Positions 6,726 to 64,000 of a stretch of DNA of 64,000 bases are shown piece by piece. Under the pieces are notes generated by a model. The model saw only the letters and a list, made by a program, of their open reading frames with translations, had not been told where the DNA came from and made no database searches. The stretch lies in NCBI GenBank assembly GCA_053919585.1, contig CM132823.1, one strand, 5' to 3'. Within the stretch, counting starts at the first letter, position 1. Each line of letters starts with the position of its first letter. Origin of the DNA: Euprymna scolopes. Lineage: Eukaryota. The position numbers and the translations under genes were made by a program.

Positions 6726-6779
<54 letters not shown>

Positions 6780-10867: not shown

Positions 10868-11615
10868 CACCACTTGAAAATAAGTTAAAACGCAAAACTT
10901 GTTCCAGTAAGTAGAAGAGTAACTTATCTTGCTTTTGGTAACATTTACTAAAAAAAAAAAAGTAAATATTTTCCATTTTAATAGTTATATTATTCTTTAG
11001 TAGACATTTTAATTTTTAAATAAGAAGAAAAAGAAATGAGAGTTGTTTCTGTTACCAGATCGATTATTATTAATATATGAAAAGTTTTAAGAAAAAAGCC
11101 TATCACCAATGAACACCTCTATTGGAGACACTTTGTCAATCTGCTAGACCACGACCAACAGTTCTTCCGAATAATGGCAAACACACCCACACAGGAACAA
11201 GGTTGTAGCTGTCATCAAAAGTTTAAAGAAAAATAAGCTGCAGGTAAAGTTTGGCGGGGGGGGGGGCATAGATTGGAGCTCAGATGAGCACTTGCCATGG
11301 AAATAAAATAACGATAAAGCAGTCATTAAAAACAAGTATTAAATCTCATCCAACCTTTTTCTTTATTGTTAAGCACTGTGAAAGAACACTTCAAAGAAGA
11401 AAACAGTTTCAGTATGTTTAAAGTATACAGGTTAATAAATAATTAAATTCTTTGGTATAATCGGACATGTTGAGGCTAGAAAACTTGACACGTACATGTT
11501 TAAAAATTATTATTTTTAATGTTTTCCAATTTTATGTGAAAGCATTTTATTTGTCGAAAGAAAATTTGAGATTTGTTTGTAATTTTTTTTTTTTCTTTCA
11601 TTCTCCTCTTTTCAG

Positions 11616-11767
11616 AGATCAATAAGGAGGAAGTTATAAAATGGCCGCCCCATCATGTGTGTTGGTATTGTGGGTTACATCGACATCCAGCGTGAAATCC
11701 AGGCTTTCAAGACAATCTGGCCTGAACATCTTGGAGAGGAGTTTGAGCATCGATTTTACAAGAACTG
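11616..11767 (+). other. Candidate spliced exon of a probably non-coding + strand transcript
   Basis: Long polypyrimidine tract plus ttttcag acceptor, and a CTG|gtgagt donor. Other candidate sites: donor ~11243 and exon 14966-15003. The ATG frame (MAAPS...) stops soon after splicing. Confidence 0.4.
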
Positions 11768-17978: not shown

Positions 17979-20773
17979 CATGCAAATTCTTTTTACATNN
18001 NNNNNNNNNNNNNNNNNNNNNNNNNNNNNNNNNNNNNNNNNNNNNNNNNNNNNNNNNNNNNNNNNNNNNNNNNNNNNNNNNNNNNNNNNNNNNNNNNNNN
18101 NNNNNNNNNNNNNNNNNNNNNNNNNNNNNNNATTTTTTTCGACGGAAACCAAAATTTTATTTTCAAAACAAAAGTAAAATTAATATAATTTTGTTATTCA
18201 AATAAAATCAATTTTTTGTTTTGAAATCAATTCAATCCGAATCACAAAAAAAAGTGTTTAAATTTATTAAAATTTAAATGTTCTTTTTTCATCGAATTAA
18301 TTTGTTTGAAATTTGAACCAAAACAAATTAATTCATGAAGTTCGTAAATTTGACCACCAAATCTCTCCAATTTAATGATCAAGCATAACTCCATCCACCC
18401 ACCTCTCAGTCCACATTCTCTCTCTCTAGCTGGGAGCACACACGAGGCAATAAAGAGAAGAAGCAGAATAAAAGTTTTATATTTTTTCCAACAAAAATGT
18501 CTGTGAAAATGAAACAAAAATGAGGGTTGCAAGGAGTTGTCATTGTAAACAAAAAATTGAAATTCAGTTCGAAATTAACATTTTATTTGTCAGTTCAATA
18601 AACGAACAATTCATCACAAACAAAAGGAGTTCATTCATGGCTAGGTCTCCATATTAGACTTGCGCAAGCATAAATAAATTAAACTTCTATAAAATGAACA
18701 AAAAAATTTATTTAAAAAAAAAATTTTTTTTTCGTTTATAAAATATATTTAACATTTCCATTCCAATTTTTTCAACAAAAACCAAAATGTTATTTTCAAT
18801 ACAAAAACGGAATGAATATAAATTTTTTTTTTTTTTTTTTTTTTGGTTTAAAGTCAAACAATTTTGGATTTGGAAAAAAAAATTAAAAACTTTTCTTTTT
18901 CTACTGAATTTGTTTGAAATTTGAATTGGATTACAAAAAAATTGTCCAAATTTATTAAAATTTAAAATTTTATTTTAAAACGAACACTGAATAAGTTCAC
19001 ATTCATGCACACGTCAGTTGGTTGCACTAGAGCTTTCCACATTCCCCCGCACCAATATTATGTCATGAATAAAACGCTAATGCTATACTCTATGAAAGAA
19101 GTACCAATATTTCGCAACAGATAAGATGCCATCCTCCAAACATTGGAATTCGGATGAGCATGCAAATTCTTTTTACATTAATTGCTTCAATATGAATAAA
19201 ATAAATAAAAAATTAAAAAAACAAAAACAAAAAAAACAATTTTTTTTTTTTCACATTTTATTTCTTTTTATAAAATGTTTAAAATAAAAAAAAATTTCAA
19301 TTTTTTTTGACGGAAACCAAAATTTTGTTTTCAAAATAAAATTAATATTTTTTCATTCTTCAAATAAAATCAATTTTTTACTAAAAACAAAATTCAATCC
19401 GAATCGCAAAAAAAAAAATTGTTTTAAATTTTCTCTTTTTCATCGAATTAATTTGTTTGAATCATGATGTTCATAAACTGATCACCAAATCTTCCAACTT
19501 TAAGGATCAACACGAATCCGCAAATGCCATCCAAATAATCCCAATAATTTATTCCCTCAAGTTGAAAATTTTCTAATTTGTCTCCTTTTATTGTAAACGA
19601 ATGAATTTTTGAATTTTCATCCAAAACAGAAATTTTTTCGTGTTATTTAAAATTTGCACAAATTCAAAGCATTGTGTTCTACCTTTTCTGAAATCTAATA
19701 ATATTCTAACCTCATTTTATGGGTAGTTGGATTGGAATTCTTCAACAAATTTCAAAAGATTTTTAATTTATTTTAAAACGAACACTAAATAGGTTCACAA
19801 ATGCAAATTCTTTTACATTAATTGCTTCAATATAAATAAAATAAATAAAAAATTTAAAAAAAAAATTTTTTTTTCACATTTTATTTCTTTTTATAAAATG
19901 TTTAAAATAAAAAAAAGATTTCAATTTTTTTTGACGGAAACCAAAATTTTGTTTTCAAAATAAAATTAATATTAAAGTGGCATCAGTCAACCAGTCTGTG
20001 TTTGCTCTCAATGTTGGTCTTGTGCTCTGTCACAGCCTGCAACATATTTTTGCCCTGAATAAAACCTGAATCGCATACTCCATGGAAACATGAGAAATAC
20101 CAATATTTTGCTACAGATAAGATGCCATCATCCAAACACGAATCGCATTGGAATTCGGATGACGAAGCAAATTCTTGTTACATTAATTCCTTCGACAGAA
20201 TCTGTGAAACGACAAAGCTTTTCCAGTTCACAAATTCTTCATGACATTTCAGACATTTGCAATTTGTTTTGGCTCTGTCCAAAGTTTTGATGAAACATGA
20301 TTCGCATACTCCATGGAAACATGAAGCATTTGAAGAGTCTAGTTGTCTGTAATACCTTTTTTCTTTCCTTTGTGAGTTTATTTTATTGTTTCTAAATGTA
20401 CCGTGACATTTTTAAAATATAATTTTCTTTTTTCGTCCTGTTTTCTTTCGTGTGTGTTTGTATTAGTTATTTCTTAATTGTTTTGTGTATTTTCTTCTTA
20501 ATCATCAGTCTTTCCTATATTATTGTGTAATTGGTGCTCCCATCCTCATGTGTGAATGGTAGGTGTATGATGCAAAGGTCGCATAAGGAAGAAACCAAGC
20601 ATACCGATATATAAGAAATAAATGTAGATTTATTTAGATAAAAAATGCAAAAGAGAGAATAAGTGACAATAAGAGTTTGGTAAAAAGAGATTGTTAGTAA
20701 TGTTGCTTGTGTCATTGGAAGCGTTATTGTCAATCTTTACTTGTTGATAGTCCAGCGAATAGAGAAAGAAATC

Positions 20774-21922: not shown

Positions 21923-24900
21923 CAGGGGTCGGCAACCTTTTGTTTAGCGTGTGCCGACTTAGGGTTTCAAATTATTCAGCGTGCCAACATTTATTATTTA
22001 TAACGATCAAGGTCAATATACCTGTTCTCTATATTTATTTCATAAAATATATAATAATGTCAAAGTTTATAAATAATGTGAAAAAACTGTTTCTGAAAAG
22101 TTTTTATTATTAATGGGACCCTTGTCCTTGCATGGTCTTTGCCAATTCCTCAATGTCGGGAACATACTTTGTAACTTTGAGCTTAACACAGTTTTCTGAA
22201 TGTTCAGGTGTTAGACGACTTCGACGTGGAGACAACACTGCTTTCATGTGAGAGAAAATTTGCTCACAAGAATAAGTTGAACCAAAAGCTGAGAGAAGAG
22301 CAAAAGCAATTTTCTTCAAACAGATGAATGAGCTTGGGAGGGAGATCCAACAGTTCAGAATAGCACCAGACTTTTCAAAATTTTCATCTTCCAGAGACTT
22401 TCTTAGTTCAGCAAATTTTAATGTCCATATTTCTGAAGACCTAAATTCAATCTGTTGCATTTCAAAATCATCAATGTCCATCCAGCTAAAAAGTTCCAGT
22501 TGGGCATTTGTCAAATCAAGCATGTCGGGCTTAATCAGATATGAAAATAAGGATCCATGAATGTAGAAGTCCTGGCTTCGTTTTTCGAATTCTGCTTTGA
22601 GTGCTTTCACGTACTCCTGAAGCTCATCTGTGTTCACTTCGAATTGATTTGCATGATTTTTCACATTTGGAAAGTACTTAAATGCTTTGATGTTGATGTC
22701 ACGGGTAAAAATGTCAAGTTTCATTGTAAACGCTTTCCAATAGCTGAAAAGATCAAGGACTGTTTGTCCCTGTCCTTGTAATTTCAAATTAAGCTCATTC
22801 AAATGTGTGTTTATGTCGGTCATAAACATCAACTTCAACAACCAGCTTTCATCATTCAGCTGAGGGAATCGTTTCTGTTTTTCATCAAGAAACATCTTAA
22901 TAGCCTCAAGACAACAAACAAATCTAGCTAAAACTTTGCCTCGACTAAGCCAGCGAACATTGTTGTATAACAGAAGATCTCCATATTCACACTCAACTTC
23001 TTGTAGAAGCGATTTGAATTGCCTGTGAACCAATGAAGAGCGAGAAATAAGAAAGTTGATTATCTCAACAACAGTTTTCATCACAGAGACCAAATCCAAA
23101 GACGAGGTCTTTGCACATAAGCCCTCCTGATGTATAATACAATGAAAACTTAACAGTTTGCGTCCAACATGATTTTCCAGAAGTTTTACAAATCCTTTCT
23201 TCTTGCCAACCATTGCAGCAGCACCATCGGTTGTTACGCAGAATAATTTGTTCAAGTTAATGTCTTGTTTAGAAAAATAACCAGTAAATGCACACAAAAT
23301 ATCTTCTGCTTTGGTTGTATCATGAAGGGGTAATAAACAACACAACTCCTCATAAATGTGATTATTCTCGAGATATCTTGCAACCACTGCTAGGCGAGAC
23401 GCATCGTTTACATCGGTGCTTTCATCAAGAGCGACACTAAATACAAGGGATTGCTTTAATCCAGTTGTTTGCTTAGTTGTCACATTTTCAGCCAAGTCAG
23501 ATATGCGCCTCTCAACTGATCTTGCAGAGACTGGTATTTCTCTAATTCGAGAGAGTATAATGTCCTTATTTTTTAAATCACGAAACAAAACTTCAGCACC
23601 ACTCAAAAAAGCTTCTTTGATGTATTCACCATCTGTAAAAGGTTTACCATTTAAAGCCACACACTGGGCTATTTTGTAACTACATTCAGTAGCTTTACTC
23701 TTCATTCCAACAGCTTGGCTCAAAATAACAGTTTGTTTTTTGAAACCAGAAATAGCTTTTTTGATGGCTTCACCTTTTTCTTCTGAAGCTTTAAACTTAG
23801 ATTGATGTTTGGTTTGAAAGTGCCTTTGTACACTAGATGTGCGACACACAACACTTTCGCAACAGAAAGCACAAACAGCACGATCCTTTTGTTCCACAAA
23901 TCCATATTCTATTGTCCAATTGTCTTGAAATGGGCGATGATCAAGTTTTCTTTTCTTTTCAGTCGTATCTAACAGCAGGGGTATTCTGAAAATATAAATA
24001 GGCCTAATTACGTAAACATCAATTATGATATATATAAAATACCAAACAAATTATTCTTGCCTTTGCTGTGGGAGAACCAGGATACATTTTAATAAAAATT
24101 GTGGAGAAAAATTATGTACAGGGTGTCCCAGAAAAAGTCTAAAGGTTTTGATTAGCTCGAGCTAGGATCCTATTCGTGCGTGGCATTCACAATTTAAAAA
24201 AAATATTTCATCCACGTATTCCTCCAATCATACCATTTTGTTTAGTATGAAGATGATCGAAATTGCTCATCTCTTCTAATCCCAGTTACGAGCTTGAAAA
24301 TTAAAAGTACAATTTCAAGAATTTGAAAGGCAATTATACCTTATCTTGTATTCATATTCTGACCACTGAACAATTCTGTAACTCTAGCACCCTTCCTAAA
24401 TTTAACACCCCTCAATTTCAAACAGCAAATAAAATGTTTAAAACTAATAATTTTCAAAATTTTTTTAGCTCATTGTGTTTAGGAAAGATTTTTCTTAAAG
24501 AAAAGTAAAACTTTTTAAAATAAAATCTCATATAATTAATTTTATCGTAAAAAATATCACAAAAAAGTCAAAGCTTCCTTACTGCGCGTGAGCGTTTTCA
24601 CGTAATAGTTTCAATTTCAATTTGTAAATTTGTAAATTCTTGAAAATTTTCTATGATTTTAAAAATCGATAATTTTTTTTCTATTCATCAAATCCTTTTC
24701 ATTTTTTCAGATTTTATGTAAAATTCTACGCTCTTTCGAATGGAAATAAAATTATTTTCTGAAAAATTCATTTTCATACTTCTTTTATTTATTTTTACCC
24801 CCCCTCTGTCTAAAAGTATGAAAGTATGAATTTCTATTAAAAATTCGTCTCGGAACACTCTAATTTATATCTTTATTTAAAGATCATAAAAAAATGAATA

Positions 24901-43858: not shown

Positions 43859-44180
43859 ACGCTCCGCTGCCGTTGTCGTTCGCGACTGTGCTCGCCTCCG
43901 AATCGACTTCCATACCTGCTTCGCAGCTAGCAGTGTAAGTAGGATCAAGTTTAATTCGTTTAGGTGGGGGATCGAAGTAGTCGTCCAGTCCCAGGTAATG
44001 CTTTGCTCTGAGTGCCCCTCGCGATAAAGCTCCCAACACACCTGTTCCAGCAGAGTCCTTGTAGAATTGGTCATCTGCTTCTTTGGTCTTGCCTTTTCCG
44101 TAGTTGAAATCGTGTCTTTTTGCGGCCCAGTCCAAGCGATTTAGGGGAGGCAGGTATTTTTTGTAGTCGAGGTTTTTGCC
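43857..44180 (-). pseudogene. VP1: Parvoviral VP1-unique region fragment with phospholipase A2 domain
   Basis: GKNLD...PLNRLDWAAKRHDFNY...EADDQF (parvoviral PLA2 HDxxY motif), then NLS-like PPPKRIKL and a Gly/Ser-rich start. Confidence 0.85.
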
Positions 44181-49300: not shown

Positions 49301-49564
49301 CATCAAAAAATCCATTATGGCATTTTATTTACAAATTCTGGCTTAGTTTATATGATAAGGTTCATATGTAGTCAAGAATATGATCTCGACACGATTTTGA
49401 ATTTCCGCTAGGTTTGAGATAGCATAAAATCACTTCACGTGATGCTACAGACCTAATTTTTTTTTTGTTTGTTCAGAAATTTTATTTACTTACAGAATTT
49501 CTATAGTTCAAGGTACATAGAGAAAGTTTTTTTTTAGGCTATTTCCACGTCTGGGCCCACTGTG
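46338..49564 (-). mobile_element. Transib/RAG1-like DNA transposon
   Basis: Termini CACACTGGCCCCAGA and (reverse complement) CACAGTGGGCCCAGA. No matching TSD. Confidence 0.85.
46658..48805 (-). CDS. Transib/RAG1-core-like DDE transposase (715 aa; lacks the CxxC after the 2nd Asp)
   Basis: FKDGCDG (RAG1 KESCDG), SMKDLK, INRSAKNSLELY...RQGLTKKPL (RAG1 ITRSHAENLQRY...VKGVSAKPF), HGTLHH, LSEECLESNNKDIR (RAG1 SEGNESGNKLFR). Confidence 0.85.
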   Translation of the reverse strand: MAGNNVLTTEYQVFEAIISQAALCRTKPPEYAKCFRQFRETHGFHENKEISGFFLNAWNHFKRLKKKRLANTEILAQASKEEIEMEGNCPQVGKKQRKSFVNLGERMQKERTQGLLDYIEEYAAKECPELSVTQLLGYMIHRVNIQSEKKTARVGYEIFSSNVNDIHSFEINEAIALMHSLTLSREQMRKMRHILAAKGIYFPTSNELLEGRKKLRPSISPVLDDSGVQVQYKDLVKMTIESIISLIPKKIIKDKCRDGVLEMVFKDGCDGAGQQVVWKSTSMLDATENMFQYGITPLKLLARYQDGSSFCLWQNHSPNNCRTLRPLFLIREKETDEDLNMVVPTTDKARQELASDGIFVTADGQGYDVNVIVHDSMKDLKFKRDISGLGGADWTDRTKVAEGFPINRSAKNSLELYNELVDENGKVKAKQGDFETRQGLTKKPLTTSDQSSITVTHSYINGTTWFLKVLYRCHADYQQWIERSDVRGEPVSRTKDRVLKAIYTETGLYLDRVNSAGGKGGTSTNGPQGRRFFSEEVLASIEKLVDEKHRENLLLLHRQLSTVLSVVSSSRKIDLMKFKELCEQTSYNLCDNFPWVMMNHTLHGTLHHSTELMSLNDAHGLGSLSEECLESNNKDIRNYLQFLSRKTDPLLQLTDVMARLLERSDPIIQNITTHFQARKFCTECGADDHTIRSHGRLVGLPKRWYASLVEDIFLD

Positions 49565-49998
49565 AGGTAGTTTGTCCTCTCCCTCATGAATTGGCACTTC
49601 GGCAATTTAAGCCTCAGGCCGTGCTCCCTCAGGCTGCTCATCACCTGCCGCAGGTGGACATAGTGCTCCTCCGGGTTCCTTGAAAATATCAGGATGTCGT
49701 CTAGGTAGGCCATGGCAAAGTCCTACATGCCCCCCAGCACAATGGACATCAACTGAGTAAACACCCCCGGAGCGTTAGCCCACCCAAAAGGCATCATTCT
49801 AAAATGAAATAGCCCGGCATGACAAGTTAAAGGCGGCCTTCTCCCGATCCCTCTTCTTTAGGCTCACCTGCCAATAACCCGACCTCAAGTCCAGGATGGA
49901 GAAGCACGTGGATCTCCCTAGCAAAGCCAAGATATCATCAATCAGGGGAAGGGGCACCGCCAACAGCTTGGTGACGGCATTCAGCCGCCGGAAATCTA

Positions 49999-51324
49999 CA
50001 GGGTGGCCGAAAAGTCCCAGGACGCTATACATGTATTTTTAATAAAACACAGTATTTTTTAATGAAACACAAAACATATACATTCAACAAAAAAAGAGAA
50101 CTTTATTAGAAACAAAGCAGAAAACAACTAGAGTAATTTAGTGGTCTAGGGGATCAGTATGTTGGCCCTCGTTGTTCTTGCACAATTCCATTCGCCTCCA
50201 GGTTCTTTGTGCCATTTTTTTTAGAGAATTCCTTGATACGCTAGCAAAAGCTGCAATAATCGCATGCTTTAGCTGATCAATGGTTTCGTATCTAATACCA
50301 GAAACTTGACCTTTAATTAAACCCCATAATGAGTTGTCTGGAGTGGTCAAGTCGGGGCTTCGTGGTTGCCAAGCAAAAGAATTTGATCCGCGCCCAATCC
50401 ATCGATCACGAAAATCTGCATTTAGCAGCGCTCTCACAGGAAGTGCATAATGTGCGGGTGCACCATCTTGCTGTAGCCATACACGATCCTTAATACCAAG
50501 TTCTATTAACTTGGGAATGAACCAGTTTCTAATCATGTTGGCATATGATTCCTGATTGACATTGCCATCAAAGAAATAAGGACCAATCAAATGTTCAGAT
50601 GTCAATGCAGCCCAAATCATGACATGTGGAGGATTATTTTCAACTTCTTCTTTGTAAAAGGGGTTTTCTTTAGCCCAGAAATATATGTTTCGACTTTTAG
50701 AACTTTTATAAATGGCGCATTCATCGCTGAATATTATCTTTCTGTGATTTCTTGGACCATCAGGAAAGCGTTTTAAAAATTTCTCACAGAATTTTTTTCT
50801 TCGATCCATATCTTCATCTGACAACTGATTTACCGAGATGGGCTTATAAGCTTTGACATCCAAGTCCTTTTTCATATGATCCATCATGGTAGCCCTTGGT
50901 ATTCCAAGTTCAGCAGAACGTTTTCTGGTGGATTTCTTGGGAGACTGTTGCAGTGATTCTTGAACACCAGCACACGTTTCCTTTCGTGTTTTAGGCCTGC
51001 CACTTCTTGCCTGATCCAGAACGCTACCTGTTTCAAAAACTTTCTTCTCCCACAGATACAGATTACTTCTTGATAGCACGGGCTTTCCAAATCTTTCTGT
51101 GAAAGCACTTCGAACATCTTCCATAGTCATGTCATTCCTGATGCGGTCGTGAACCCAAACAGCAGCAATTAAGCGCTCCTCAACAGTAAATACACTGATG
51201 TCAGTCATAACCTGAAAAAATAAATGAAATAAATTGTTTTAACAACATTAGAATATTAAAATCAATCATATTTAACAGCATTAAAATATTAAAAATAGTG
51301 TCCTGGGACTTTTCGGCCACCCTG
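49999..51324 (-). mobile_element. Tc1/mariner transposon, rosa (DD41D)-like, full length
   Basis: TIR cagggtggccgaaaagtcccaggac with TA TSD. Splits Gypsy RT at FCV|DFR. Confidence 0.95.
50138..51208 (-). CDS. DDxD transposase (DD42D by my count), intact 356 aa
   Basis: RSGRP, FSDE, QQDGAPAH, WQPRSPDLTTPD. Confidence 0.92.
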   Translation of the reverse strand: MTDISVFTVEERLIAAVWVHDRIRNDMTMEDVRSAFTERFGKPVLSRSNLYLWEKKVFETGSVLDQARSGRPKTRKETCAGVQESLQQSPKKSTRKRSAELGIPRATMMDHMKKDLDVKAYKPISVNQLSDEDMDRRKKFCEKFLKRFPDGPRNHRKIIFSDECAIYKSSKSRNIYFWAKENPFYKEEVENNPPHVMIWAALTSEHLIGPYFFDGNVNQESYANMIRNWFIPKLIELGIKDRVWLQQDGAPAHYALPVRALLNADFRDRWIGRGSNSFAWQPRSPDLTTPDNSLWGLIKGQVSGIRYETIDQLKHAIIAAFASVSRNSLKKMAQRTWRRMELCKNNEGQHTDPLDH

Positions 51325-53741
51325 TACACAGAATCGGTGCCCCCCATCCTTTTTCTCGACCACTACTATCGGGAAGCTCCAGGGAGAGCCTGACCTCTCT
51401 ATAACTCCTGTTTCCAGCGTTACATTTACCGCTTCTCTCACTAGTTTTCTCTTATGAAGCGGTGTTCTATAAGGCCTTAGTTTAATGGGCAGGTGTCCAC
51501 CCGTGTCTATCCCCACCTCTATGGTCCGGGTCTGTCCCAGCTCCTTATCTGTCATGGCTATCACATCCCTGTTGTCTCTCAGTAACTGCCTGATTTCGTA
51601 CCTATATCTATCCGGTACTACCCGTACCTTCTCCATCTGCCTCAGAGGGCGGGTGTAGGCTAACTTTTCTCCCTTCCCGATGGTCACGTTTGTATTCGTG
51701 GTGTTTGCCACCAGTACTGGGACTGTCTCGCATCCCTGAACCACGCCCTCGCTCAGTCACTCCCTCCTCGTTGTCTGTATACTTCTCGGTCGGGTCTATC
51801 TGAAACACCCTTCCTTCCAGTCCATCCGTGCCGTCCACCTTGCCCCCACAGGACATGACTGTCCGTGGGGGAAGACTCTCGTCTCCCTCGGCCTTCACCG
51901 GAAGAGGAGCGTATTCTGTGAACCCCCCCCCCCAGTGGGATCTCCACCCCTCCCACCGTCAAGGTGGCCGGGCTGAAACTCAGTGTAGCTCCCCTCACCC
52001 TGATCCAGTCTCCACCCAGAATCATCTCGCTACACAGTCTGGATACCACATAGAAGGGAAATCTCACCCTTTGTTTCGCTACTTGCACCGGCAGCCATAC
52101 CTTCCCCATCACTGACAGCCGACTACCGTCGGCCTGACTGACCTCTAGGTCCGACAGGTATAATTTTCTCCCTCCCGCGACCGCATCATAGATCCCGCGT
52201 CTATCAACAAGATCGATGCCCCAGTGTCGACTAGTGCCTCTACCCGGGTGGTCCCTACCACCACACTACAAGTAAATTCCTTGTCTTCCGTAAGCAGGGA
52301 CAGCACCTGCGCCTTCTTCCCTTCTCGCTCTGGGGCTTCCTCCCAGTGTTCTCCCACCGTGGACATTGGGGCTGGCAGCAGCAGTCCCCTCCTGGTCTCG
52401 TCCTCCCACTCTCCCCTGCACTGCAGCGCCTCTCTCGAGGCATTGGACAGTCTGGACTCCCTCTATACATCCCAGAGTTCTCCTCCCAGGCGTGACCGCC
52501 CCTCTGGTGGGAGCAGTCCTCCCTGTGACTGGTCCTCCCACCCAGGCGGCTCTCTCAGAACTGGCAGTTGGTGGCAAGGTGGTCATCCTTGTTGCATATC
52601 CAACCTGCGAGGGGTTTAGATTTTATGGGGGCCACCCTGCTCCTTACTACCCCTGGGGAGGTCTTAGGTGGGGTACCCCGGTCATGTGTTCTCAATCCCC
52701 ATCCCTGGTTTCCCGCCACACCACACCATTGAGCTTCGTGCCCAGACTGTCCACAACGGGTGCAGCCGGGACCGGCCAGGCGGGATGATCTCCCAAGACC
52801 GGTGGCCTTCGCCCCCACAGGTCCAGCACACAAATCCAGGCCGGCCCCGGGCGAATCCTCCGGACCCATCTCATTCTGTTCCCCAGTTCCCCGCTCCTAT
52901 TTCGCGACTTCTCCCCCATTATTCTTTTCTGCAACCACGCATAGTTCTTAGCTATTTTGCGTGCTTCCTCTTGCGTGTGCGGGCCACCCTTTAGCACCTC
53001 TATCTTGGTCGCTTCGTCCTGCAATGGATCCACCATCGTGTCAACTAGCATTGCTTGGGTTGTGGGCATATCGCAGTGTTTGGTCACTGGATCCGCCAGC
53101 ACCGCCAGTTCCTGCATGCGGTTGACCAGTCCATCCACATCCTCCCCGTCGGCCATCTCTATTCGAGACAGCTCGGGCACCGCCTGCACCGTGGTCTTTT
53201 CGCTGGCGAATTTCCTCTTCACTTGATCGCGAAAATCAGACCAGGCTATGTGTGGGTTACTTTCCAAGCATTTGCATATATATTCCGAGGCCGCCCCGGT
53301 CGCCCCGTCGCAGGCCAGCAGCACCATTTCCCTCTCTGTCAAACCATAAACTAATCTTTTCTTTTCTTTGATCGCCAACCACTCCTTAACTCTCCTCGGG
53401 TCTCCCCCATATGCGGGTATGCTAACCCCCCATAATGGCCGCTCCATGGTCATCTGCAGCTCAACAGTCTGCTCTGACCCCTCCCCCATCGATTGACCCG
53501 CCCCGAATCCCTCCTGAGAATGCATTGTCATTATTTTTTTTTTTTTTTTCCACCCAATAACAGGGCTACTCCTCACCCCCTACAAGGTTGAACAGCACCC
53601 CACACAAAACACAAACAGCCGCTGAAACCGAGCAAGGTATACAAAAGAGGGAACCAGCAAAAAAAAGAAAGGACACCCGGTCTGCTGCACCTGTTTTCTT
53701 CTGCAACTGGCGGATGGTTAACGAGCTGTCCAGACTGTATA

Positions 53742-55287
53742 CAGTGCGTTACTTGCTTTATTGCAGATCACATTTTCCTTGATAACTTTATTACTAAACG
53801 TAATTAACTGAAATTTTGTACAGCTATAGAAAACACATTGATAAGTTAGTCCATAAAATTTTATCCAAATATTCTTACTATTTCAAAAGTTATAACAATT
53901 TTTGAAACATATGAAATTTTTACTGTTTCTCACTTTATTGCAACGTATTGAAAATACAGTTTAAAGGTAATAAAAGTATGAATTTATTTGTTAATTTAAT
54001 TCAAATTAGTAACAGTAACAGATATATAACCATATAGAAATCAAATACAACCCACAAAGCGTGACATTTTAACGAAAAACGAATTATTTATCAACATAAT
54101 TTCCCTTCCTTGCAATCACCTTAAACAGTCTATTATCAACAGATGAGGTTAGTTTTTTTATTTGAGAAGGTGTTATGGTCCTAGACACTTCAAGAATTTT
54201 ATTCCAAAGGGCATCTTTTGATGTGAATTGCCGTCCTCCTTCATAAACCCCTCTTTTCAGAATTGACCAAAAGTTCTCTATTGTGTTCAGAGAACAAGGC
54301 GGCCAGGTCATGAGTTTCGTCTTTGATCCACAGAGACTCAAGGTAGGATTTGATAGCTTTTGCAGCGTGAGATGGAGCGTTATCGTGCATAAAAGTAAGG
54401 CGTCTACGACGAAGAAGTGGAAGATCATCCAGCCAAGGTGACAAATGCTCCTCCAAAAACTGGATGTATGTTTGGCTGGTAAGTTTAACGCCGTCAGGCA
54501 CTCTGAAGGGTCCTAAGAGTTCATCTCCAACGATTCCAGCCCAAAACATAACTCCTCCCCCTCCTTGTTGACGCCTGATACGATATGGCATAGGATCTCC
54601 CTTAGGACTCCAAACTTTAGCCCATCCATCTGGACCATCCAGCGTGGCTCTCGATTAAAACTTGTTGAAAGTCTGTTTTCATGTATTTTTGTGCCCAAGC
54701 TATGTGTTTTTTCATGTTGGTTTGGTTCAAAGGAGGTTTTGAAATGGGTTTTACGTTTCTTGCAATTTCGTTTAAAATACTACATCTTGTTTTTCTTGAC
54801 ATTGCAGCAACGCCAGCTTTTATAAAAATAGACTTGCTGGTGTCATTTGGGTCCTTATTGACTTCTTTGCTTATTTTTCGCATGTCACGAGGAGAAATGA
54901 CCTTTCTTTTGCCCTTATCCTTACGTGGTGAAATCTTTGGCTTCTCCACAAAGGATGCCACAGTTCTTTTATCTCTACCAAGTTCTTCTGATAACTGGAG
55001 AATTGTAAGACCCTCTGCAAGACCTGCGGTTATCCTGTTCTTCTCTGGTGCAGTCAATCGTCCATTTTTAGGCATTTTTAGAACTCCTGCAATAAAGCGA
55101 GAAACAGTAAAAATTTCATCTTTTTCAAAAATTGGTATAACTTTTGAACTAGTAAGAATATTTGGATAAAATTTTATAGACTAACCTTTCAAAGTGTGTT
55201 CAATGGCTGTACAAAATTTGAATTATGTTTAGTATTAAGAAAGTTATTAAATAAAATATGATCTGCAATAAAGCAAGTAACGCACTT
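53742..55287 (-). mobile_element. Tc1 (DD34E) transposon with frameshifted transposase (54084-55075)
   Basis: TIR cagtgcgttacttgctttattgcagatca with TA flanks. GGGGVMFWAGI, FMHDNAPSH and LNTIENFW are split across frames. Confidence 0.92.
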
Positions 55288-55363
55288 TATACTAGGTGAT
55301 AGATGTCCCAAGGATAGTGAATCTAACTGGGCTCTAACATGCTCTAATAGGGTTATCAATGAT

Positions 55364-55407
55364 TGACGTGACCCCCATCATTAACATTAATGATGGGGGT
55401 CACGTCA
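55364..55407. other. Second copy of the putative viral terminal hairpin
   Basis: tgacgtgacccccatcattaacattaatgatgggggtcacgtca, with one central mismatch. Confidence 0.8.
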
Positions 55408-55858
55408 TCTGTTTTTTTTTTACCTGATAATTTTTAAATAAAATAGAATTGCATTGCATGGGTCCGAGCCCTGATGCGGGTAGTGCCACGGCCTAATATC
55501 ATAGTCATTGCTTAATATAGTTTTTAGCTGTGACCTAATTACTTGACCTACTTTTGTAATTTTCAATCGTCGCTGACGCTGATTCGATGATGGTTCGTTT
55601 GAATTTCTTTAACGATCCCATGTCTGATGGTTGATCTGAAAGAGAATATCGAACATGCGAAATAATATTGAATCATGCGAAATAATATTGAACCATGCCA
55701 ATGTCATATCAGTTCAAGATGCAGTATTATAAGAACGATTTGAGTTTAGTGTATATATATAGTTTATTTACAATATGTACATCATCGTCAGTGTGTTTTA
55801 GGAAATATTTACAAAAGTCCATAGAATCATTGATCAGTGTCATTGATCGTATAGTTTA

Positions 55859-57845
55859 TCAATCGGAGTCACTGAGCACTTCCTCACATTCTAAAAATAG
55901 CTGTGACGTCAGCCCTCGTCCGGTGATCTGTCGTAGGTACAGTGCTAATGTGTAGTTTATGATTTTTTTTTTTTTTTTTTTTTTTTTGGGGGGTCACGAA
56001 GATGTCGTCGTCAGGCTCCTCAGTCTCTGACTCACTGAGCACTATCACACCGGAGACCGGTGTGTCCTCGACGAGTGTGTCCTGTGAGAAGCTCGGCGCC
56101 GCGGGGCTGGGTTGGTTTATTCTTGTTGGGCACCTGTGTGCTTTGCAGCCGTGCGTTTTGCAGTATTGTGTTGGTTGGTTTTCGTCTATTTCGCAGGGCT
56201 GTACCATCCAGTCTTCTACGTCGGAGTCGTCGGAGATGCGCACGTTTTCTACTTCTTCTCCGGCCATAAGGTCCTGGAATAATTGTCTGCGTGCCTTGCA
56301 GTACCCTGCTTGTTTGTCTGGCGACAACCCTTCCACTGCCTGCACAGTGAAGTGTGTCGATGCCGCGGGTTCCTCTATGTCCTCCTCCTCTTGGAACTGG
56401 TATGTTTGGTTTGTGTAGTCCATGACGTATTGTCTCCATACGGTCAACCACATCGTCGGATTCAATTCACGGACTCCCCAACCTTTTAGTGCCGGCATCG
56501 GTCGTTTTGTTTCGTATAGGAACATTCGGTTGTGCATTGCCGTTCGTTCCTGGGGTACGTGCCGCCATGGATCGTCGTTGGAAGTCGAGAGACACAGTGT
56601 TCTTTCGAGGTAGCGTTCTGCCTGGTGTTTGACGTTCACCGCAGTTGTCGTCCCTTCCAGGATGCATTTTCCTTCCTCTACATTTTGTTGGGTAAACCAC
56701 ATTTCGTCAGTGTATATTAATGTTTTGTCTACGCATGATCCGAACGTGAAGTTGTCGGATGCTTGGCAGCGCATCCTGCCGCAGTTCATGAGGCCGTTCC
56801 TGACCGATCTAAGCACGTACGATTTGCCCGAGTTACTGGGTCCCGTTATGTGGAACCCGTTCTTTTTCGCCCGTATCATGTGGCAAACCTCGAACAAGTT
56901 TCTGCCGAACTCTACTGGGTCGAAATTGTGATACTGCGACCATGCGTCGTAAATGTCTAACGACTTTTGGACGGTCCAATACCTGTTTCCGTCCATGCTG
57001 AAGAGGTCCTTTTTCTGTCTTATTTGTTCGAAGATTGGTGTCACCTTCGTTTGTATTTGTAAGTCGCTAGCTGCCGCCTGCATAATGGGTTGTATGTTTT
57101 GCGTGTTAGTGAAGATGTGGTCCCACGTTTCACGCACTTTCGCACTGGCAGATTGTTTGCAGTAGAGCATGACTTTAGCCATGTCCGTACTGTTACATTT
57201 TCGCATGATCTCGAGGATAAACTTGTATTTCTGTCCTCTGAGGGTCGATTTTCCAGTCAGGCCTGTGTCTACTGTTGGTTCCTCTGGTGTCTTTAATGGC
57301 TTGTCGCAGATTCTTCTGTAAGTGGCGAGTTGCCCGGGCGTCTCCAGGTGTCCTGCAGCTACCACTGAGCGTTTTGCCGGGTCCATCGTCAGGTAACTGC
57401 AGAGACCGTACGGGTTGTAGATCTTTTGGCAGGAGATTTGGTAAGGGTTGATTTGCCGTTCGCTTTGTAGTTTCTTCATTTGCACGTAAGTGTGCTCACA
57501 TGTCGGGTGGTTGTGGTGCCACGTGATCATGTGGAAATGGTCTACGTCTGCGCAGTGTTTTAAGCTGCTTGGTCCTGCTACGTGATATACGACTATGTAG
57601 GGACGCTGGTCGAGAATTCTGGCGAAGTAACCGTGGGTGGCGTTAGATGGCTGTAAGGTTATGGAATCCTGGTATGGTTTGGTTTCTGTAGATCCTGGAC
57701 TTAGTTTGAATTCTCCCTCGGTTTCCCAACGGTAGATCCAGGTGTAGGGACGGATCTGTTTGCCGTTGACAGTTTCTCCGTTCACCAGGTCGTTGAATTT
57801 TTGTTGTTCCTCTCTTTGGGTGCCGCTGCTGGTCGAGCCTTCCAT
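55859..57845 (-). CDS. NS1: Endogenous parvovirus NS1, copy 3 (near intact; 1-nt frameshift in an A25 run)
   Basis: All NS1 motifs present and no internal stops. With 24 instead of 25 A the frame would end ...INYTLALYLRQITGRGLTSQLFLECEEVLSDSD*. TATA at 57891-57897. Confidence 0.9.
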
Positions 57846-57924
57846 CCTGACGGTCTGGAGCGAGTGCCTGAACTCTGGTAGATGTGCGTCTTTTATAGCG
57901 CGTTAATGTGTCGTAAGAAATTAG

Positions 57925-59499: not shown

Positions 59500-62071
59500 C
59501 ACTAGTCAACACAATATTTTTGGCGGGCAAAGTAAGACTGGTTTCTGGGGTTTTCAAGGGCGCTGAATCCGAATCTGACATTAGTTTTTTTCAAATTGGC
59601 TCTAGTTTGTGAGATATCACAGGGGGGTCGTTTGTCTGAAATCACCCATTCGCGACCATAGCTAAACGTACAAAAAACGGCTAAATAGTGCATAAATGTC
59701 AGATATTGATTTTTATGATAATCTTAAACCACAAAGACAGTGTAAAATCTCAATCTAACAAGTTAAGTTAGATATAACATCATTTTATTTATCCTATAAC
59801 TGAACACTTTTCATAGATTTCGAGGATATACAAAAAATTTGCTAAAAATTTGCTGAATTTTAATTCTCCAAGTGAAAAAAAACATTTACATAATCAGTTA
59901 TATATCATAAATTAATGCAAAGCATTATACACTAGATTCTTAGTTACAATGAACACACAAAACAATATTTTATTCACAAAACTAAAATTGACGTTTATAC
60001 GATTTTCGCTTGTGGGCAACTTTTGGGCAGTCTCTCAAAAGGTTCCAGCAGTAGTCTGCCATCATGTGCTCATCCCATTTGCCTTGATACCTCCTTCCAT
60101 TGTTTTGATGTCTTGATGGAATCTCTCTCCCTGCTCCTCACTGTAATCACCAAGATTACCAGGAAATCTGCCGAGGTGGCTAAACAAGAAATGAACTTTA
60201 ATGCTCATATTTGCCCCTAGTTTTCCGTATGCAGTAAGCATCTTACGGACCAATTGCTTGTAATTGTCAGCTTTGTGATTTCCCAAAAAGTTTGTCACTA
60301 CATCTGTGAAGGACACCCAAGCATTTAACTCAACCGTGTTCATATGATTAGTGAAGTCAGAATCCCTCATGAGCATTCGAATCTGAGGTCCATCGAAGAT
60401 GCCACCTTTAGCTTTTTCGATGGAAAGACCTGGAAATTGCCTGCATATGTACTTGAAGCAATCCCCATCCTTGTTCAACGCCTTAACAAACTGCTTCATG
60501 AGCCCTAGTTTTATGTGCAATGGAGGGAAGATGATTCTATCCCTGGGTACCAAAGGCTCATTGATGACGTTGGCTGTGCCGACTTCGAGACTTTCTCGTT
60601 CTGGCCAGTTCTCCCTTCTCCAGTGCTGGATTCTTGCTCTGCTATCCCACAAACAAAGAAAGCAGGGATACTTTGTGTACCCACTTTGCTGACCAAGCAG
60701 AAAATTCACCATTTTCAAGTCCACACAAATCAGCCATTTATGAGTGTTGTAATTCAGCTTTTCAAGAACAAATTTGATAGCATCATACTCTTCTTTCATC
60801 TTGGTAGAATGGCCAATTGGTACAGGAGCAAACTTATTGCCATTGTGCAAAAGTACAATTTTTAGAGTTGCTTTCGAGCTATCTATGAAGAGACGCCAAT
60901 CTGCTGGGTTATATGATGAGATCCCCATGCAGTTAAGAAGTGCAGAAACGTCATTACAAAAGATCAGGTCGTTTTTAGAAAAGAAACGGAGCAAGCTGCC
61001 TTCCCTTGTCCTATAGTATGTTACTTTTGTGCCAGAATCAAGAATGTTTTTCTCTTGGAGTCGTGATGCAAGAACTTCAGACTGCTCCTTCGACAAACAA
61101 AGGTCTCGCACTAGGTCATTAAGTTCAGATTGATTGAAAAGCTGAGGGCCATTTGAGGGTTCTTCATAGTCACTACATCTATCATCACTTGATATTGAAA
61201 GATCAGCTGGAATCTCTTCGGTTTCATCGATTTCAGGCAAACTGGTGAAAACAGGCACAGGTAGATCCTCAGAGTGCGCAACAGGACGGATAGCAGAATC
61301 CAGGCTTGGATACTGCCAATTTGCTTTCTTGTGCTTGTTAAACCCCGTCATGTCATTGAGACAGAAGTAGCAGTCATCAAAATGATTGTTGGGCTCTCTC
61401 CACACCATTGGTACAGCAAACTTCAACTTCAGCTTACCGTTGGTCCAACCGCGGAGACTTTCTACACAGGTTTTGCACACCATATGTGGGGCCCAAGACT
61501 TGTCTTGGTCACCAAGTATCATATCGAAGTATGCTTTGTATGCCCTCTTGACAAAGTCTGTAATATTCCTCTTTTGTTGTGCCATCATATACTGTCCACA
61601 AATGTAACAAAAGACATCCGGTTCATATCTGCAACATCTTCTAGAAGAACTCATTTTCTCTCTGGAACTCATTTTCAACTGTGGAATTAAAAAGAAAATT
61701 CTTAATTACTGTTTAATTTATACTGCAACTATATTTATGGAACATGTTATTAAGTAATTACAGTATATAATTATATAAAAATTCTCCCTATATAAATAAT
61801 TATATAAAAATTCTCCCTGAAATACTTCAATATATACATAATCATTATAATGATTCAATAATATCAGAAAATTATTATTTACTGCTTCTATATTGAAGTA
61901 TTTCAGGGAGAATTTTAGCAGTTTAGGCTTATTTGGGGCTATCAGTATCTTCTAAACTAGAGCCAATCTGGCAAAACCAATGTTATATTCGTAATCAGCG
62001 ACCTTTAAAACCCCAGAAAACACTCCTAGATGGTCTGCCAAAGAAAAAAAATAAAAATTTGTTGACCAGTG
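59500..62071 (-). mobile_element. Chapaev3 (CMC superfamily) DNA transposon
   Basis: Termini cactagtcaac / gttgaccagtg with a 3-bp TSD taa. Splits the Gypsy integrase at GEDHHKL|IIEKQH. Confidence 0.88.
59980..61678 (-). CDS. Chapaev3 transposase with a C-terminal frameshift
   Basis: PDVFCYICG, FIDSSK, CVDLKMV...YPCFLCLWDSR, PPLHIKLGLMKQF, SEEQGERFHQDI. The expected RYQGKWDEHMMADYCW continues in another frame after ~60095. Confidence 0.85.
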
Positions 62072-64000
62072 TAATTTATGGTGATCCTCACCCATGTACT
62101 TTCGTCGTGGCTTTAGCAAATTGTCCACTAGCAGCACTACATCTCGCCCAAATATCATATAGTATGGCGAGAATTTTGAAGTTTCATTCTCACAAAATCT
62201 CACTGCAGCTAGTGCCCGAGTTAAATATAAATCCCAATTCTCCTCATTGTCCTTCACCAATTTGGACAATACATCGGCTAAGGTTTTATGGAATCTCTCC
62301 ACCTTAGCGTTGCTCTGCGGGTGATATGGAGATGTCGTCACATGCTCCACCCTCAAACTCTCCAATGCCTCACGCATTATTCTATTTACATTCTCGGGTC
62401 CATTGTCTGTGACTAATTGCACAGGTGACCCATAACGAGGGAAGATTTCAATTAAAATCACATCTGACACGGTCTGTGCCTTTCTATCAGGGAGGGCATA
62501 TGCTTCTGGCCAATTAGTTAGCCAATCTACAAAACTCGCTATATATTGATTTGCCCTGGGGGTCTCTCCATATGGACCTGATATGTCCATACTGACTTTT
62601 TCAAACGGAAAATTCGGTATGTCAGTCTCCCTCAAGGGGGCCAATCGCTGCCTCCTACCCTGGACTTGACATACCTGACAGCCATTTATATACTCTGTGA
62701 CTTCTACATACAATTTTGGCCAGTAGTGCTTTCGGCCGATTAATTCATGGGTCTTATCAATTCCCATGTGTCCCATCCTCTCATGACACTGTACGAGGAT
62801 TTCCCTTCTAAGCGCTCTCGGGACAACCACTCTCAGTCTGGGCTCTTCCTCAGCCCCAGATAGGTAATATAACACATCGTCATGCACTATTAACTTCCTT
62901 GCTTTTCCAGCCTCCGCTTCTTTCCTCAAGGCTAGTATCTCTTCATCCCTCTGACTATTCTCGATTACTTCCTTCCAGTGTGGGTCACTGACGATCACTA
63001 AACTACCCGTTTCATCTTCCTCAAACTCAGGTCTACCCTTCAAGGTATGCGCATTTAAGACATTCACCTGGTAAGCCCTATCATCTACTCCAGGCTCTAA
63101 ATGTATCGATTCTGCTTCTAACTGTTTAGGTATTCGGGATAATAAGTCAGCACAAGTATCATCCTTTCCCGCCAAGTACTCAATTTTACAGTTATAGCCA
63201 CTCAACTTCAGTGCCCATTGCTGAATCTTCTTGTTCGTCCATTCTGCCTCCAGCAGATATTTCAAGGGTTTATGATCAGTTTTGATCGTGAACACGGCTC
63301 CACTAAGGTAGTAGTCTAATTTTTGTACTGCGTACATAATTGCATACGCTTCTTTTTCTATCACCGGCCATCTCTGCTGTGTCTCCGAGAGCCGATGTGA
63401 CAAGAAATACACAGGGACCTCCTCCGGTATATTTGGCACCGGCCCGTCCCTGTCTGGACAAGATTGTGTTAATACCGCACCTATGCATCTATCACTGGCA
63501 TCAGTGTATAAGACCATAGGTCTGCTCAAATCTGGGTAAGTCAAAAGTGGAATCGCTGTTAACTGTTCCCTGAGACAATCAAAGGCTCGCTGACAATCCT
63601 CCGTCCACCTGAATCTAGCGTATTTCTTGGTGAGAGCTATCAGTGGTCCGGCCAATCGCGAGAAGGCAGGGATAAACCTTCTATAGTACCCAATGGCACC
63701 TATAAATCCCCTCACTTCTCTAACACTCTTGGGCGCAGGCATTGCCCTGATTATTTCTACTTTATCCAAATCAGGTTTTATCCCTTCCTTATCGATTATA
63801 AATCCCAAATACTTAGTCTCGTCTTTCATAAATTGACACTTTGGCAATTTTACTTTCAGGTTGTGTTCTCTCAACCTCTCCATCACCTTCTCTAAATGCT
63901 TAATGTGCTCGTCAGGTGTTTTGGAGAACACCAACACATCATCCAGATAGGCCATAGCAAAGCCCTCTAATCCTTCTAAAACAATAGACATCAATTGAGT

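What the first reader, a model, noticed from the sequence alone, without database searches (positions are those of the whole stretch)
11600..64000. Candidate flamenco-like unistrand piRNA cluster: all orientable insertions are antisense to one strand
Seen: over ~52 kb, RTE, hAT, Sola2, Transib, rosa, Tc1, Chapaev3, two Gypsy elements and the parvoviral copies are all on the minus strand, including DNA transposons nested in others. For 12 independent insertions, the chance of one shared orientation is (1/2)^11, about 5e-4. Known: cut-and-paste transposons have no intrinsic orientation bias, and unistrand piRNA clusters (Drosophila flamenco, mosquito EVE-rich clusters) accumulate antisense TE and viral fragments. 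Inference: a long + strand precursor yields antisense piRNAs. The payload here is rich in DNA transposons and a ssDNA virus rather than mainly LTR elements.
Basis: partly seen in the sequence, partly recalled or inferred. Interest (0 to 1): 0.92.

Follow-up and report, generated by a model that had tools for sequence, protein, structure and literature searches.

The report
Same-strand pile-up of transposons and viruses
A gene-poor 42-kb stretch holds about a dozen young transposons and parvovirus-like gene copies that all point the same way, which fits a one-strand piRNA "trap" locus of a known kind but cannot be proven without small-RNA data.

Summary
The orientation claim is essentially real. 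Between 21.9 kb and the window end, one gap-free stretch holds a hAT, a Sola2-like transposase, a Transib, a Tc1, a mariner-like element, a CACTG-ended (CMC/Chapaev-type) element, two Gypsy elements and four parvoviral NS1 sequences, about 30 kb in all. Every one is on the minus strand. None of 71 plus-strand ORFs hit Pfam. Several elements have clean target duplications, so they are separate insertions. The N gap lies outside all verified elements.

Independence is lower than claimed. NS1 copy B is joined to copy A, and fragment D is fused in frame to a Gypsy RT. That leaves 9-10 events, P about 0.002-0.004 before allowing for how many windows were scanned.

The NS1 copies are not decaying duplicates. 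They differ mainly at third codon positions (dN/dS 0.04-0.11). Each keeps a TATA box, and A and C keep a conserved 3' region ending in the same palindrome. This indicates repeated recent captures of diverged lineages.

A unistrand piRNA cluster is the best single explanation (about 0.45), but no expression evidence exists here. The locus is not Gypsy-dominated like flamenco. Densovirus EVEs in arthropod piRNA clusters are already known.

The parts
17999..18131 (.). Assembly gap (133 N) in AT-rich non-coding repeat DNA. No verified element touches it.
21923..26542 (-). Full-length hAT transposon. Its 646-codon open frame is at 22113-24050. It has a 16-bp perfect terminal inverted repeat and a perfect 8-bp target duplication (TCCTAGAG).
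   Evidence: Pfam Dimer_Tnp_hAT; terminal repeats and target duplication
29305..34233 (.). 54-bp satellite of 91 copies, derived from the low-coordinate end of dispersed repeat X. The 1672-aa 'ORF' and the two long plus-strand ORFs here are artefacts of the repeat.
34236..37152 (-). Parvovirus-like unit A. On the minus strand, in order: the C-terminal part of an upstream viral ORF, a TATA box, the NS1 gene (34981-36711, 577 aa, with HUH and Walker A motifs kept), a conserved 3' non-coding region of about 500 nt, and a perfect terminal palindrome at 34236-34287.
37146..39708 (-). Parvovirus-like unit B, joined head to tail to A. It has the same promoter and NS1 gene. The NS1 gene is broken (2 frame changes and 2 stops relative to copy C). 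The terminal palindrome is missing.
40508..43243 (-). 912-codon open frame of a Sola2-like transposase. It has no Pfam family. It has 305 homologues of about 850 aa, multi-copy in many metazoans. The structural model (pLDDT 81) gives weak integrase/IstA-like fold hits. The ends of the element were not found.
44173..45130 (.). Second copy of non-coding repeat X, 90% identical to 20047-21059 and in direct orientation. It abuts NS1 fragment D.
45127..45627 (-). NS1 fragment D, matching residues 186-352 of copy A. Amino-acid identity is 88% but nucleotide identity only 75-79%. It has one internal stop. It is joined in the same reading frame to the Gypsy#1 RT fragment.
45783..49569 (-). Transib element with a 725-codon open frame at 46661-48835 (RAG1-like). 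It has short terminal inverted repeats. It is bracketed by a 152-bp, 100% identical direct repeat (45631-45782 and 49570-49721).
49570..53579 (-). Gypsy#1, 5' part only: gag, a protease motif and part of RT. It has no LTR pair. It is interrupted by two nested DNA transposons and ends at the junction with NS1 fragment D.
49997..51326 (-). Tc1 element nested in Gypsy#1. It has a 366-codon open frame, a 32-bp terminal inverted repeat and a TA target duplication.
53737..55292 (-). It has terminal inverted repeats of about 200 bp and a TA duplication. The transposase frame is in at least three pieces.
55363..57924 (-). Parvovirus-like unit C: TATA box, NS1 gene (55887-57845, 653 aa, open), the conserved 3' region, and the terminal palindrome shortened by 3 nt.
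59500..62071 (-). Full-length CACTG-ended (CMC/Chapaev-type) DNA transposon with a 547-codon open frame and a 3-bp TTA target duplication. It is nested in the Gypsy#2 pol gene. A 94% identical copy with different flanks is on an ENA metagenome contig.
62072..64000 (-). Gypsy#2 pol (RT, RNase H, integrase), running off the window end.

Best explanation
The stretch from about 21.9 kb to beyond 64 kb is a gene-poor zone next to a satellite, where mobile DNA accumulates. At least nine or ten separate, mostly recent insertions have been retained in one orientation. They come from eight transposon families and a parvovirus-like lineage.

The most likely reason is that the region is part of a single-strand piRNA source locus read on the plus strand. 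Insertions antisense to that transcript yield silencing piRNAs and are kept. Sense insertions are lost or never fixed.

SHOWN: the elements, their strand, their separate insertion scars, their youth, and the repeated capture of diverged NS1 lineages.
INFERRED: the plus-strand transcript, its processing into piRNAs, and selection on orientation.
For: - All about 30 kb of orientable sequence is on the minus strand and none on the plus strand.
- The insertions are discrete events with their own target duplications, and some are nested in one another.
- The elements are young. They have long open frames. Their GC3 of 0.33-0.61 sits in a 22-35% GC background. The hAT target duplication is perfect.
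- Four NS1 sequences lie within 24 kb and diverged under purifying selection: dN/dS 0.04-0.11, and 193 of 238 A-C differences are at third codon positions. Their 5' ends differ, and A and C share a natural 3' palindrome. This means repeated capture, not copying of one dead insert.
- No host coding domain was detected in the window.
- Precedents exist. Strand bias alone located flam-like clusters that sRNA-seq later confirmed (PMC10643416). Unidirectional EVE-plus-TE piRNA clusters are known in Aedes (10.1101/127498). Parvoviridae EVEs are enriched in arthropod piRNA clusters (10.1101/396382). A densovirus NS-plus-terminal-repeat EVE lies in a piRNA cluster in D. citri (PMC7527727).
Against: - There is no RNA evidence of any kind.
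- The source organism is unknown, so it is not known whether it has unistrand clusters at all.
- P of 0.002-0.004 is not rare across thousands of windows.
- Some of the co-orientation has a mechanical cause: the A-B head-to-tail junction and the in-frame RT-NS1 fusion.
- Most elements are full-length rather than the fragments typical of old clusters.
- Only two elements are Gypsy.
- Poly(A) hexamers are not depleted on the plus strand.
- The NS1 units carry their own minus-strand promoter-like TATA boxes, so minus-strand transcription is possible.
- Only 42 kb is visible, and neither a promoter nor an end was seen.
Confidence: 0.45

Rival explanations
1. Chance co-orientation in an ordinary heterochromatic transposon nest. 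The region is next to a satellite and recombines little. It simply accumulates young elements, and their shared strand is one of the few such runs expected somewhere in any TE-rich genome.
For: A 4.9-kb satellite and dispersed repeats flank the nest. With 9-10 independent events, P is only 0.002-0.004. The window was picked out of a whole-genome scan. Elements are full-length and nested, as in ordinary TE islands.
Against: Zero plus-strand elements among about 11 units and 30 kb. Four captures of one virus lineage in 24 kb, all on the same strand, are hard to get by chance alone.
Confidence: 0.3
2. Orientation is filtered by a host transcription unit that is not a piRNA precursor. The stretch would lie in a very long intron or under a long non-coding RNA on the plus strand. 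Insertions that bring sense-strand splice or poly(A) signals would be selected against.
For: Antisense bias of TEs inside genes is established knowledge. The window shows neither end of the biased stretch.
Against: No host coding domain was found on either strand anywhere in the 64 kb. Intronic bias is usually modest rather than total, and is weak for cut-and-paste elements. The plus strand carries many poly(A) hexamers. A 4.9-kb satellite inside an intron would be unusual.
Confidence: 0.1
3. Mechanical coupling rather than selection. Co-orientation would arise from how the pieces were made or joined: head-to-tail joining of viral genomes, template switching between a Gypsy RNA and NS1 mRNA, homology-guided or NS1-guided integration next to earlier copies, and local duplication.
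For: B is joined head to tail to A. D is fused in frame to the Gypsy#1 RT, like the LTR-virus hybrids in Aedes, where 543 of 614 LTRs share polarity with the nearest EVE (10.1101/127498). All dispersed repeats in 15.7-45 kb are in direct orientation. A 152-bp perfect duplication brackets the Transib.
Against: This cannot explain the strand of the hAT, Tc1, mariner-like, Transib, CACTG-ended and Sola2-like elements. These are unrelated cut-and-paste elements, and four of them have their own target duplications.
Confidence: 0.1
4. The NS1 units are host genes or a still-active NS1-encoding element rather than passive captures, and the surrounding transposons are incidental.
For: dN/dS is 0.04-0.11. 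The TATA box, HUH and Walker A motifs are conserved. The 3' region is 96-100% conserved.
Against: B and D are broken. The 5' ends differ between copies. A and C end at a viral-type terminal palindrome, which fits integration of a replicating virus better than a host gene family. No capsid gene was found; the only hint is a PLA2 hit at E 0.007, below the Pfam cutoff.
Confidence: 0.05

Closest known systems
Drosophila flamenco and flam-like unistrand piRNA clusters (van Lopik et al. 2023, PMC10643416)
   Same: Dense transposon array with near-total bias to one strand. The same sequence-only criterion was used there to find clusters de novo, and sRNA-seq later confirmed them.
   Different: In those clusters the bias is carried by Gypsy-family elements, the clusters span hundreds of kb, and they are defined by a promoter and somatic piRNAs. 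Here only 2 of about 11 units are Gypsy, most are DNA transposons and parvoviral sequences, only 42 kb is visible, and no expression data exist.
Unidirectional EVE-containing piRNA clusters of Aedes aegypti (Whitfield et al. 2017, 10.1101/127498)
   Same: Viral fragments interspersed with transposons, all in one direction. One viral fragment here (D) is fused to a Gypsy RT, like the LTR-virus hybrids proposed there.
   Different: The Aedes EVEs derive from RNA viruses and sit among LTR fragments. Here the virus is a ssDNA parvovirus-like lineage. Three copies are near-complete NS1 gene units with promoter, and two of these (A, C) keep the terminal palindrome. This looks like DNA-level integration.
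Diaphorina citri densovirus-derived EVE (endogenous NS plus endogenous ITRs) in a piRNA cluster (Nigg et al. 2020, PMC7527727); Parvoviridae EVEs across 48 arthropods (ter Horst et al. 2018, 10.1101/396382)
   Same: An integrated densovirus-type non-structural gene together with terminal-repeat sequence, in a repeat-rich locus. Such EVEs commonly yield primary piRNAs.
   Different: That EVE is an 862-bp partial fragment of one known virus. Here there are four insertions of diverged lineages (dS 0.3-1.1), up to 2.9 kb long and with open NS1 frames. The nearest relatives are unnamed Logan contigs at 47-61% identity.

Membership tests
Unistrand (flamenco-like) piRNA cluster | 24-32-nt, 1U-biased small RNAs arising from one genomic strand only | not testable with these tools
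   No small-RNA data are available and the source organism is unknown.
Unistrand (flamenco-like) piRNA cluster | Long Pol II precursor transcript from a discrete promoter | not testable with these tools
   No RNA data. No eukaryotic promoter tool. Neither end of the biased stretch is in the window.
Unistrand (flamenco-like) piRNA cluster | Strong strand bias of transposon insertions | tested here: met
   About 30 kb in 11-12 units is on the minus strand and none on the plus strand.
Unistrand (flamenco-like) piRNA cluster | Enrichment of Gypsy-family LTR elements that carry the bias (PMC10643416) | tested here: not met
   Two Gypsy elements, against six DNA transposons and four parvoviral sequences.
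Unistrand (flamenco-like) piRNA cluster | Size of a hundred kb or more, outside centromere and telomere | tested here: inconclusive
   At least 42 kb is visible and it runs off the window end. A 4.9-kb satellite lies inside it.
Parvoviridae-derived endogenous viral element | NS1 with SF3 helicase domain and HUH nuclease motif | tested here: met
   PF01057 scores 58-66 bits against a cutoff of 20. AAV Rep68 aligns at the same positions in PDB. HUH and Walker A motifs are present in A, B and C.
Parvoviridae-derived endogenous viral element | Terminal palindrome at a genome end | tested here: met
   A 25-bp perfect stem at the 3' end of A (dG -30.5, z -11.6). The same palindrome, 3 nt shorter, ends C. 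No left-end palindrome was found.
Parvoviridae-derived endogenous viral element | Capsid (VP) gene | tested here: not met
   The only hint is a PLA2-like hit at E 0.007, below the Pfam cutoff, at 43860-44303. There was no PDB match.
hAT transposon | hAT dimerisation domain, short terminal inverted repeats, 8-bp target duplication | tested here: met
Tc1/mariner transposons (two elements) | DDE_3 / HTH transposase, terminal inverted repeats, TA target duplication | tested here: met
Transib transposon | RAG1-like transposase, terminal inverted repeats, 5-bp target duplication | tested here: inconclusive
   The RAG1 Pfam hit is above cutoff and short inverted termini were found. No 5-bp duplication was found. 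Instead a 152-bp perfect direct repeat brackets the element.
CMC (CACTA/Mirage/Chapaev) transposon | CACTG/CACTA termini, 3-bp target duplication, family-specific transposase | tested here: inconclusive
   The termini and the 3-bp TTA duplication are met. The transposase has no Pfam family and no named relative. The 'Chapaev3' name is unverified.
Sola2 transposon | Sola2-type DDE transposase, terminal inverted repeats and target duplication | tested here: inconclusive
   It is a multi-copy protein of about 850 aa in metazoans with weak integrase-like fold hits, E >= 0.004. No terminal repeats were found and no named hit.
RTE non-LTR retrotransposon | APE endonuclease plus RT coding sequence | tested here: not met
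   ORFs on both strands of 11.6-21 kb gave no Pfam hit. The ORF of repeat X has a single hit to a repetitive protein. A copy decayed below ORF-based detection is not excluded.

The most novel reading that the evidence does not exclude
The 2.6-2.9-kb NS1 units derive from a recently circulating, undescribed parvovirus-like lineage. Its diverged variants were captured at least three times, always in the same orientation, in one small locus of a non-mosquito host. If the locus makes antisense piRNAs, this would be a record of repeated, orientation-selected 'immunisation' against a ssDNA virus. Alternatively, the units could be an NS-only replicon or genome segment that integrates next to earlier copies in a fixed direction.
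Probability: 0.12. Interest if true: 0.75.

Novelty: new member of a known kind. Interest (0 to 1): 0.45.

Why it matters
If small RNAs confirm it, this would be a unistrand piRNA source locus outside the Drosophila and mosquito models. Its strand bias extends to cut-and-paste transposons and to a ssDNA virus, so orientation selection would not be limited to Gypsy-type retroelements.

The NS1 copies are useful in themselves. They are several near-intact, selectively constrained variants of an unnamed parvovirus-like lineage, each with a promoter-like TATA box, and two (A, C) keep the terminal palindrome. They give a dated series of captures and a handle for finding the exogenous virus by sequence surveys.

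If small RNAs are absent, the locus is an ordinary transposon nest. It would then be a caution that orientation runs of about ten elements occur by chance.

Tried and rejected
- RTE: Pfam on ORFs of both strands in 11.6-21 kb found nothing. An exhaustive HMMER search with the longest ORF of repeat X found one repetitive protein only.
- Host exons and the intron model: 21 ORFs in 1-11.6 kb and 111 ORFs in 11.6-64 kb gave no host domain. This is a weak test, because short exons escape it.
- The 1672-aa ORF and two plus-strand ORFs of over 800 aa at 29-34 kb are rejected as artefacts of a 54-bp (18-codon) satellite.
- Neutral duplication of one dead NS1 insert is rejected by dN/dS 0.04-0.11 and by the different 5' ends.
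- Identifying the organism failed. An exact-protein look-up of the Transib ORF found nothing. The window's proteins are absent from the protein collection. Searching papers for two SRA run numbers found nothing. Only a 5S rRNA-like gene and no tRNA were found.
- A scan of IMG/VR for NS1 relatives found none.
- Capsid: the PLA2-like ORF and the upstream viral ORF gave no PDB match.
- Poly(A)-hexamer asymmetry between strands was uninformative.
- Terminal repeats of the Sola2-like element were not found.
- Logan relatives of NS1 (L001, L003-L005) share the upstream ORF. They share neither the 3' region nor the palindrome.

Full report
LAYOUT OF THE WINDOW. The window is AT-rich: 22-37% GC up to 34 kb, with patches of 38-52% GC beyond. 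It has three N runs, at 8251-8462, 9309-9465 and 17999-18131. The flagged gap lies in non-coding AT-rich repeat DNA. The only 'ORF' across it is made of Ns. Every element whose strand I could verify lies in the gap-free stretch 18132-64000, so the gap has no bearing on the observation. The only claimed element to its left, the RTE, could not be verified.

WHAT IS ON THE MINUS STRAND. Pfam places all of the following on the minus strand:
- a hAT transposase;
- three Parvo_NS1 genes;
- a RAG1-like Transib transposase;
- a Tc1 DDE_3 transposase;
- a second Tc1/mariner transposase, in pieces, inside 200-bp terminal inverted repeats;
- a Gypsy gag, a protease motif and two RT pieces (Gypsy#1);
- a Gypsy RT-RNaseH-integrase that runs off the window (Gypsy#2).

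Two long ORFs with no Pfam family are also on the minus strand.
- The 912-codon ORF has 305 homologues of about 850 aa. They are multi-copy in Hydra, a sea spider, a spider and a frog. A confident model (pLDDT 81) has weak best fold matches to retroviral integrases and the IstA transposase. This fits a DDE transposase, but the name Sola2 remains unverified.
- The 547-codon ORF has 2213 homologues, 57-70% identical in lizard, frogs, Hydra and beetles. A metagenome contig carries a 94% identical copy with different flanks. This fixes the element at 59500-62071, with CACTG termini and a 3-bp TTA duplication. It is a CMC/Chapaev-type transposon nested in the Gypsy#2 pol gene.

INSERTION SCARS. The hAT element (21923-26542) has perfect 16-bp termini and a perfect 8-bp duplication. 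Tc1 (49997-51326) and the mariner-like element (53737-55292) have TA duplications. Tc1 and Transib lie inside Gypsy#1. These are therefore separate insertion events in time.

CONTROLS FOR THE 'ALL MINUS' CLAIM.
- 71 plus-strand ORFs of at least 55 aa that do not merely mirror the known genes gave no Pfam hit at E <= 0.01.
- 40 comparable minus-strand ORFs gave another RT piece and a weak parvoviral PLA2-type hit.
- tblastn with every TE protein of the window and 127 fetched homologues found only minus-strand matches. It also revealed a fourth NS1 fragment, D.
- The huge ORFs at 29-34 kb on both strands are artefacts of a 54-bp satellite, which equals 18 codons.
ORFs on both strands of 11.6-21 kb have no Pfam hit. 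The longest ORF of the 1-kb dispersed repeat X has only one hit, to a repetitive protein.
- Limit of the method: an ORF-based Pfam scan misses heavily decayed fragments, and no curated repeat library was available.

INDEPENDENCE AND STATISTICS. Self-alignment shows that all repeats within 15.7-64 kb are in direct orientation. The X/Y/V repeats and the satellite derived from X probably reflect local duplication, so I do not count them. NS1 copy B is joined head to tail to A. Fragment D is fused in the same reading frame to the Gypsy#1 RT fragment. Counting A+B as one event and Gypsy#1+D as one gives ten events:
- hAT
- Sola2-like
- Transib
- Tc1
- mariner-like
- CACTG-ended element
- Gypsy#1+D
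- Gypsy#2
- A+B
- C

Lumping all the near-complete NS1 units (A, B, C) as one gives nine. The chance of one shared strand is then (1/2)^9 to (1/2)^8, about 0.002-0.004. A TE-rich genome would yield a few such windows by chance.

THE PARVOVIRAL COPIES ARE THE MOST INFORMATIVE PART. Units A (34236-37152), B (37146-39708) and C (55363-57924) are 85-91% identical in DNA but 88-94% identical in protein.
- Nei-Gojobori estimates on the open frames as they stand give dN/dS of 0.11 (A-B), 0.04 (A-C) and 0.06 (B-C), with dS of 0.31, 0.91 and 1.15.
- Of 238 A-C differences, 193 are at third codon positions.
- HUH and Walker A motifs are kept. The helicase aligns to AAV Rep68 at matching positions.
- All three share a TATA box about 50 nt before the start codon.
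- About 500 nt of 3' non-coding sequence is 96-100% identical, more conserved than the gene itself.
- A ends in a perfect palindrome with a 25-bp stem (dG -30.5 kcal/mol, z -11.6). C ends in the same palindrome, 3 nt shorter. B lacks it.
- The 5' ends differ. A retains part of an upstream ORF that is also found upstream of NS1 in distant Logan relatives. B and C stop at different points.
- D has 88% amino-acid but only 75-79% nucleotide identity to A and C.
- Breaks relative to the C frame: A has 2 stops, one of which may be the natural stop because relatives encode 514-568 aa. B has 2 frame changes and 2 stops. D has 1 stop. C has none.

INTERPRETATION OF THE NS1 COPIES. This part is inference. 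The sequences diverged while NS1 was under selection, that is, in a replicating lineage. They then entered this locus separately and recently, through or near a natural genome end. This resembles the densovirus NS-plus-terminal-repeat EVE of D. citri (PMC7527727). D looks like an RNA-level hybrid with Gypsy, as proposed for Aedes EVEs (10.1101/127498). No capsid gene was found. Relatives are only unnamed Logan contigs at 47-61% identity, and there are none in IMG/VR.

WHAT THE LOCUS MOST LIKELY IS.
- The features: at least ten young insertions from nine unrelated sources, packed into about 42 kb, with no recognisable host coding sequence in the whole window. The stretch lies next to a satellite, all insertions are on one strand, and one virus lineage was captured repeatedly.
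- This is the pattern expected of a transposon trap read on one strand. Strand bias alone has successfully located such clusters in Drosophila (PMC10643416).
- Arguments against. There is no RNA evidence. The host is unknown. The bias is not Gypsy-driven. The elements are mostly intact. Plus-strand poly(A) hexamers are not depleted. The P value is modest, and part of the co-orientation is mechanical.
- My estimates: unistrand piRNA source locus 0.45, chance in a heterochromatic nest 0.30, other host transcription unit 0.10, mechanical coupling as the main cause 0.10, active or host-gene NS1 units 0.05.

NOVELTY. Unistrand clusters with co-oriented EVEs, and Parvoviridae EVEs in arthropod piRNA clusters, are already described (10.1101/396382, 10.1101/127498, PMC7527727). 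If real, this is a new member of a known kind. Its unusual composition is DNA transposons plus multiple near-intact NS1 units.

Noticed in passing
29305-34233; 20047-21059; 44173-45130: The 54-bp satellite (91 copies, 97% matches) is 80-87% similar to the low-coordinate end of a 1-kb dispersed non-coding repeat (X) and lies in the same orientation. The satellite probably grew out of that repeat. NS1 unit A abuts the satellite, and NS1 fragment D abuts the other X copy.
   Followed up: partly
45631-45782 and 49570-49721: A 152-bp, 100% identical direct repeat, part of the Gypsy#1 RT, brackets the Transib element. This is far longer than a Transib target duplication. Its left edge coincides with the RT/NS1-D junction. 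It may be an assembly artefact or an aberrant repair event.
   Followed up: partly
45127-45837: A single stop-free frame runs from a Gypsy RT fragment straight into an NS1 fragment. This in-frame retroelement-parvovirus chimera suggests template switching during reverse transcription.
   Followed up: partly
34310-34810; 37146-37650; 55440-55930: The 3' non-coding region of the NS1 units is 96-100% identical among copies whose synonymous sites differ by dS 0.3-1.1. It contains a 20-bp tandem repeat (2.2-2.7 copies) and an 87-codon plus-strand ORF with no Pfam hit. It could be a cis-acting replication region or a product of gene conversion.
   Followed up: partly
59500-62071; locus L002: The CACTG-ended transposon has a 94% identical copy in an ENA metagenome assembly. 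Its transposase is 57-70% identical in lizard, frogs, Hydra and beetles. This is a strong signature of horizontal transfer.
   Followed up: partly
9857-9971 (-): A 5S rRNA match (53.8 bits, full model length) sits in the otherwise non-coding first 11.6 kb. It could be a gene, a pseudogene or a 5S-derived SINE.
   Followed up: no
8251-8462; 9309-9465: Two further N runs that the scan's note did not mention. Both lie outside the finding's verified elements.
   Followed up: yes
4115-4983; 2757-3015; 7353-7990; 5500-7168: Several long hairpin-like inverted repeats (MITE-like) lie in the first 10 kb. This is the only part of the window where repeats occur in both orientations.
   Followed up: no
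43860-44303 (-): A weak hit to the parvoviral VP1 phospholipase A2 family (E 0.007, below cutoff), downstream of NS1 fragment D and repeat X. If real, it is the only capsid-gene trace in the window.
   Followed up: partly
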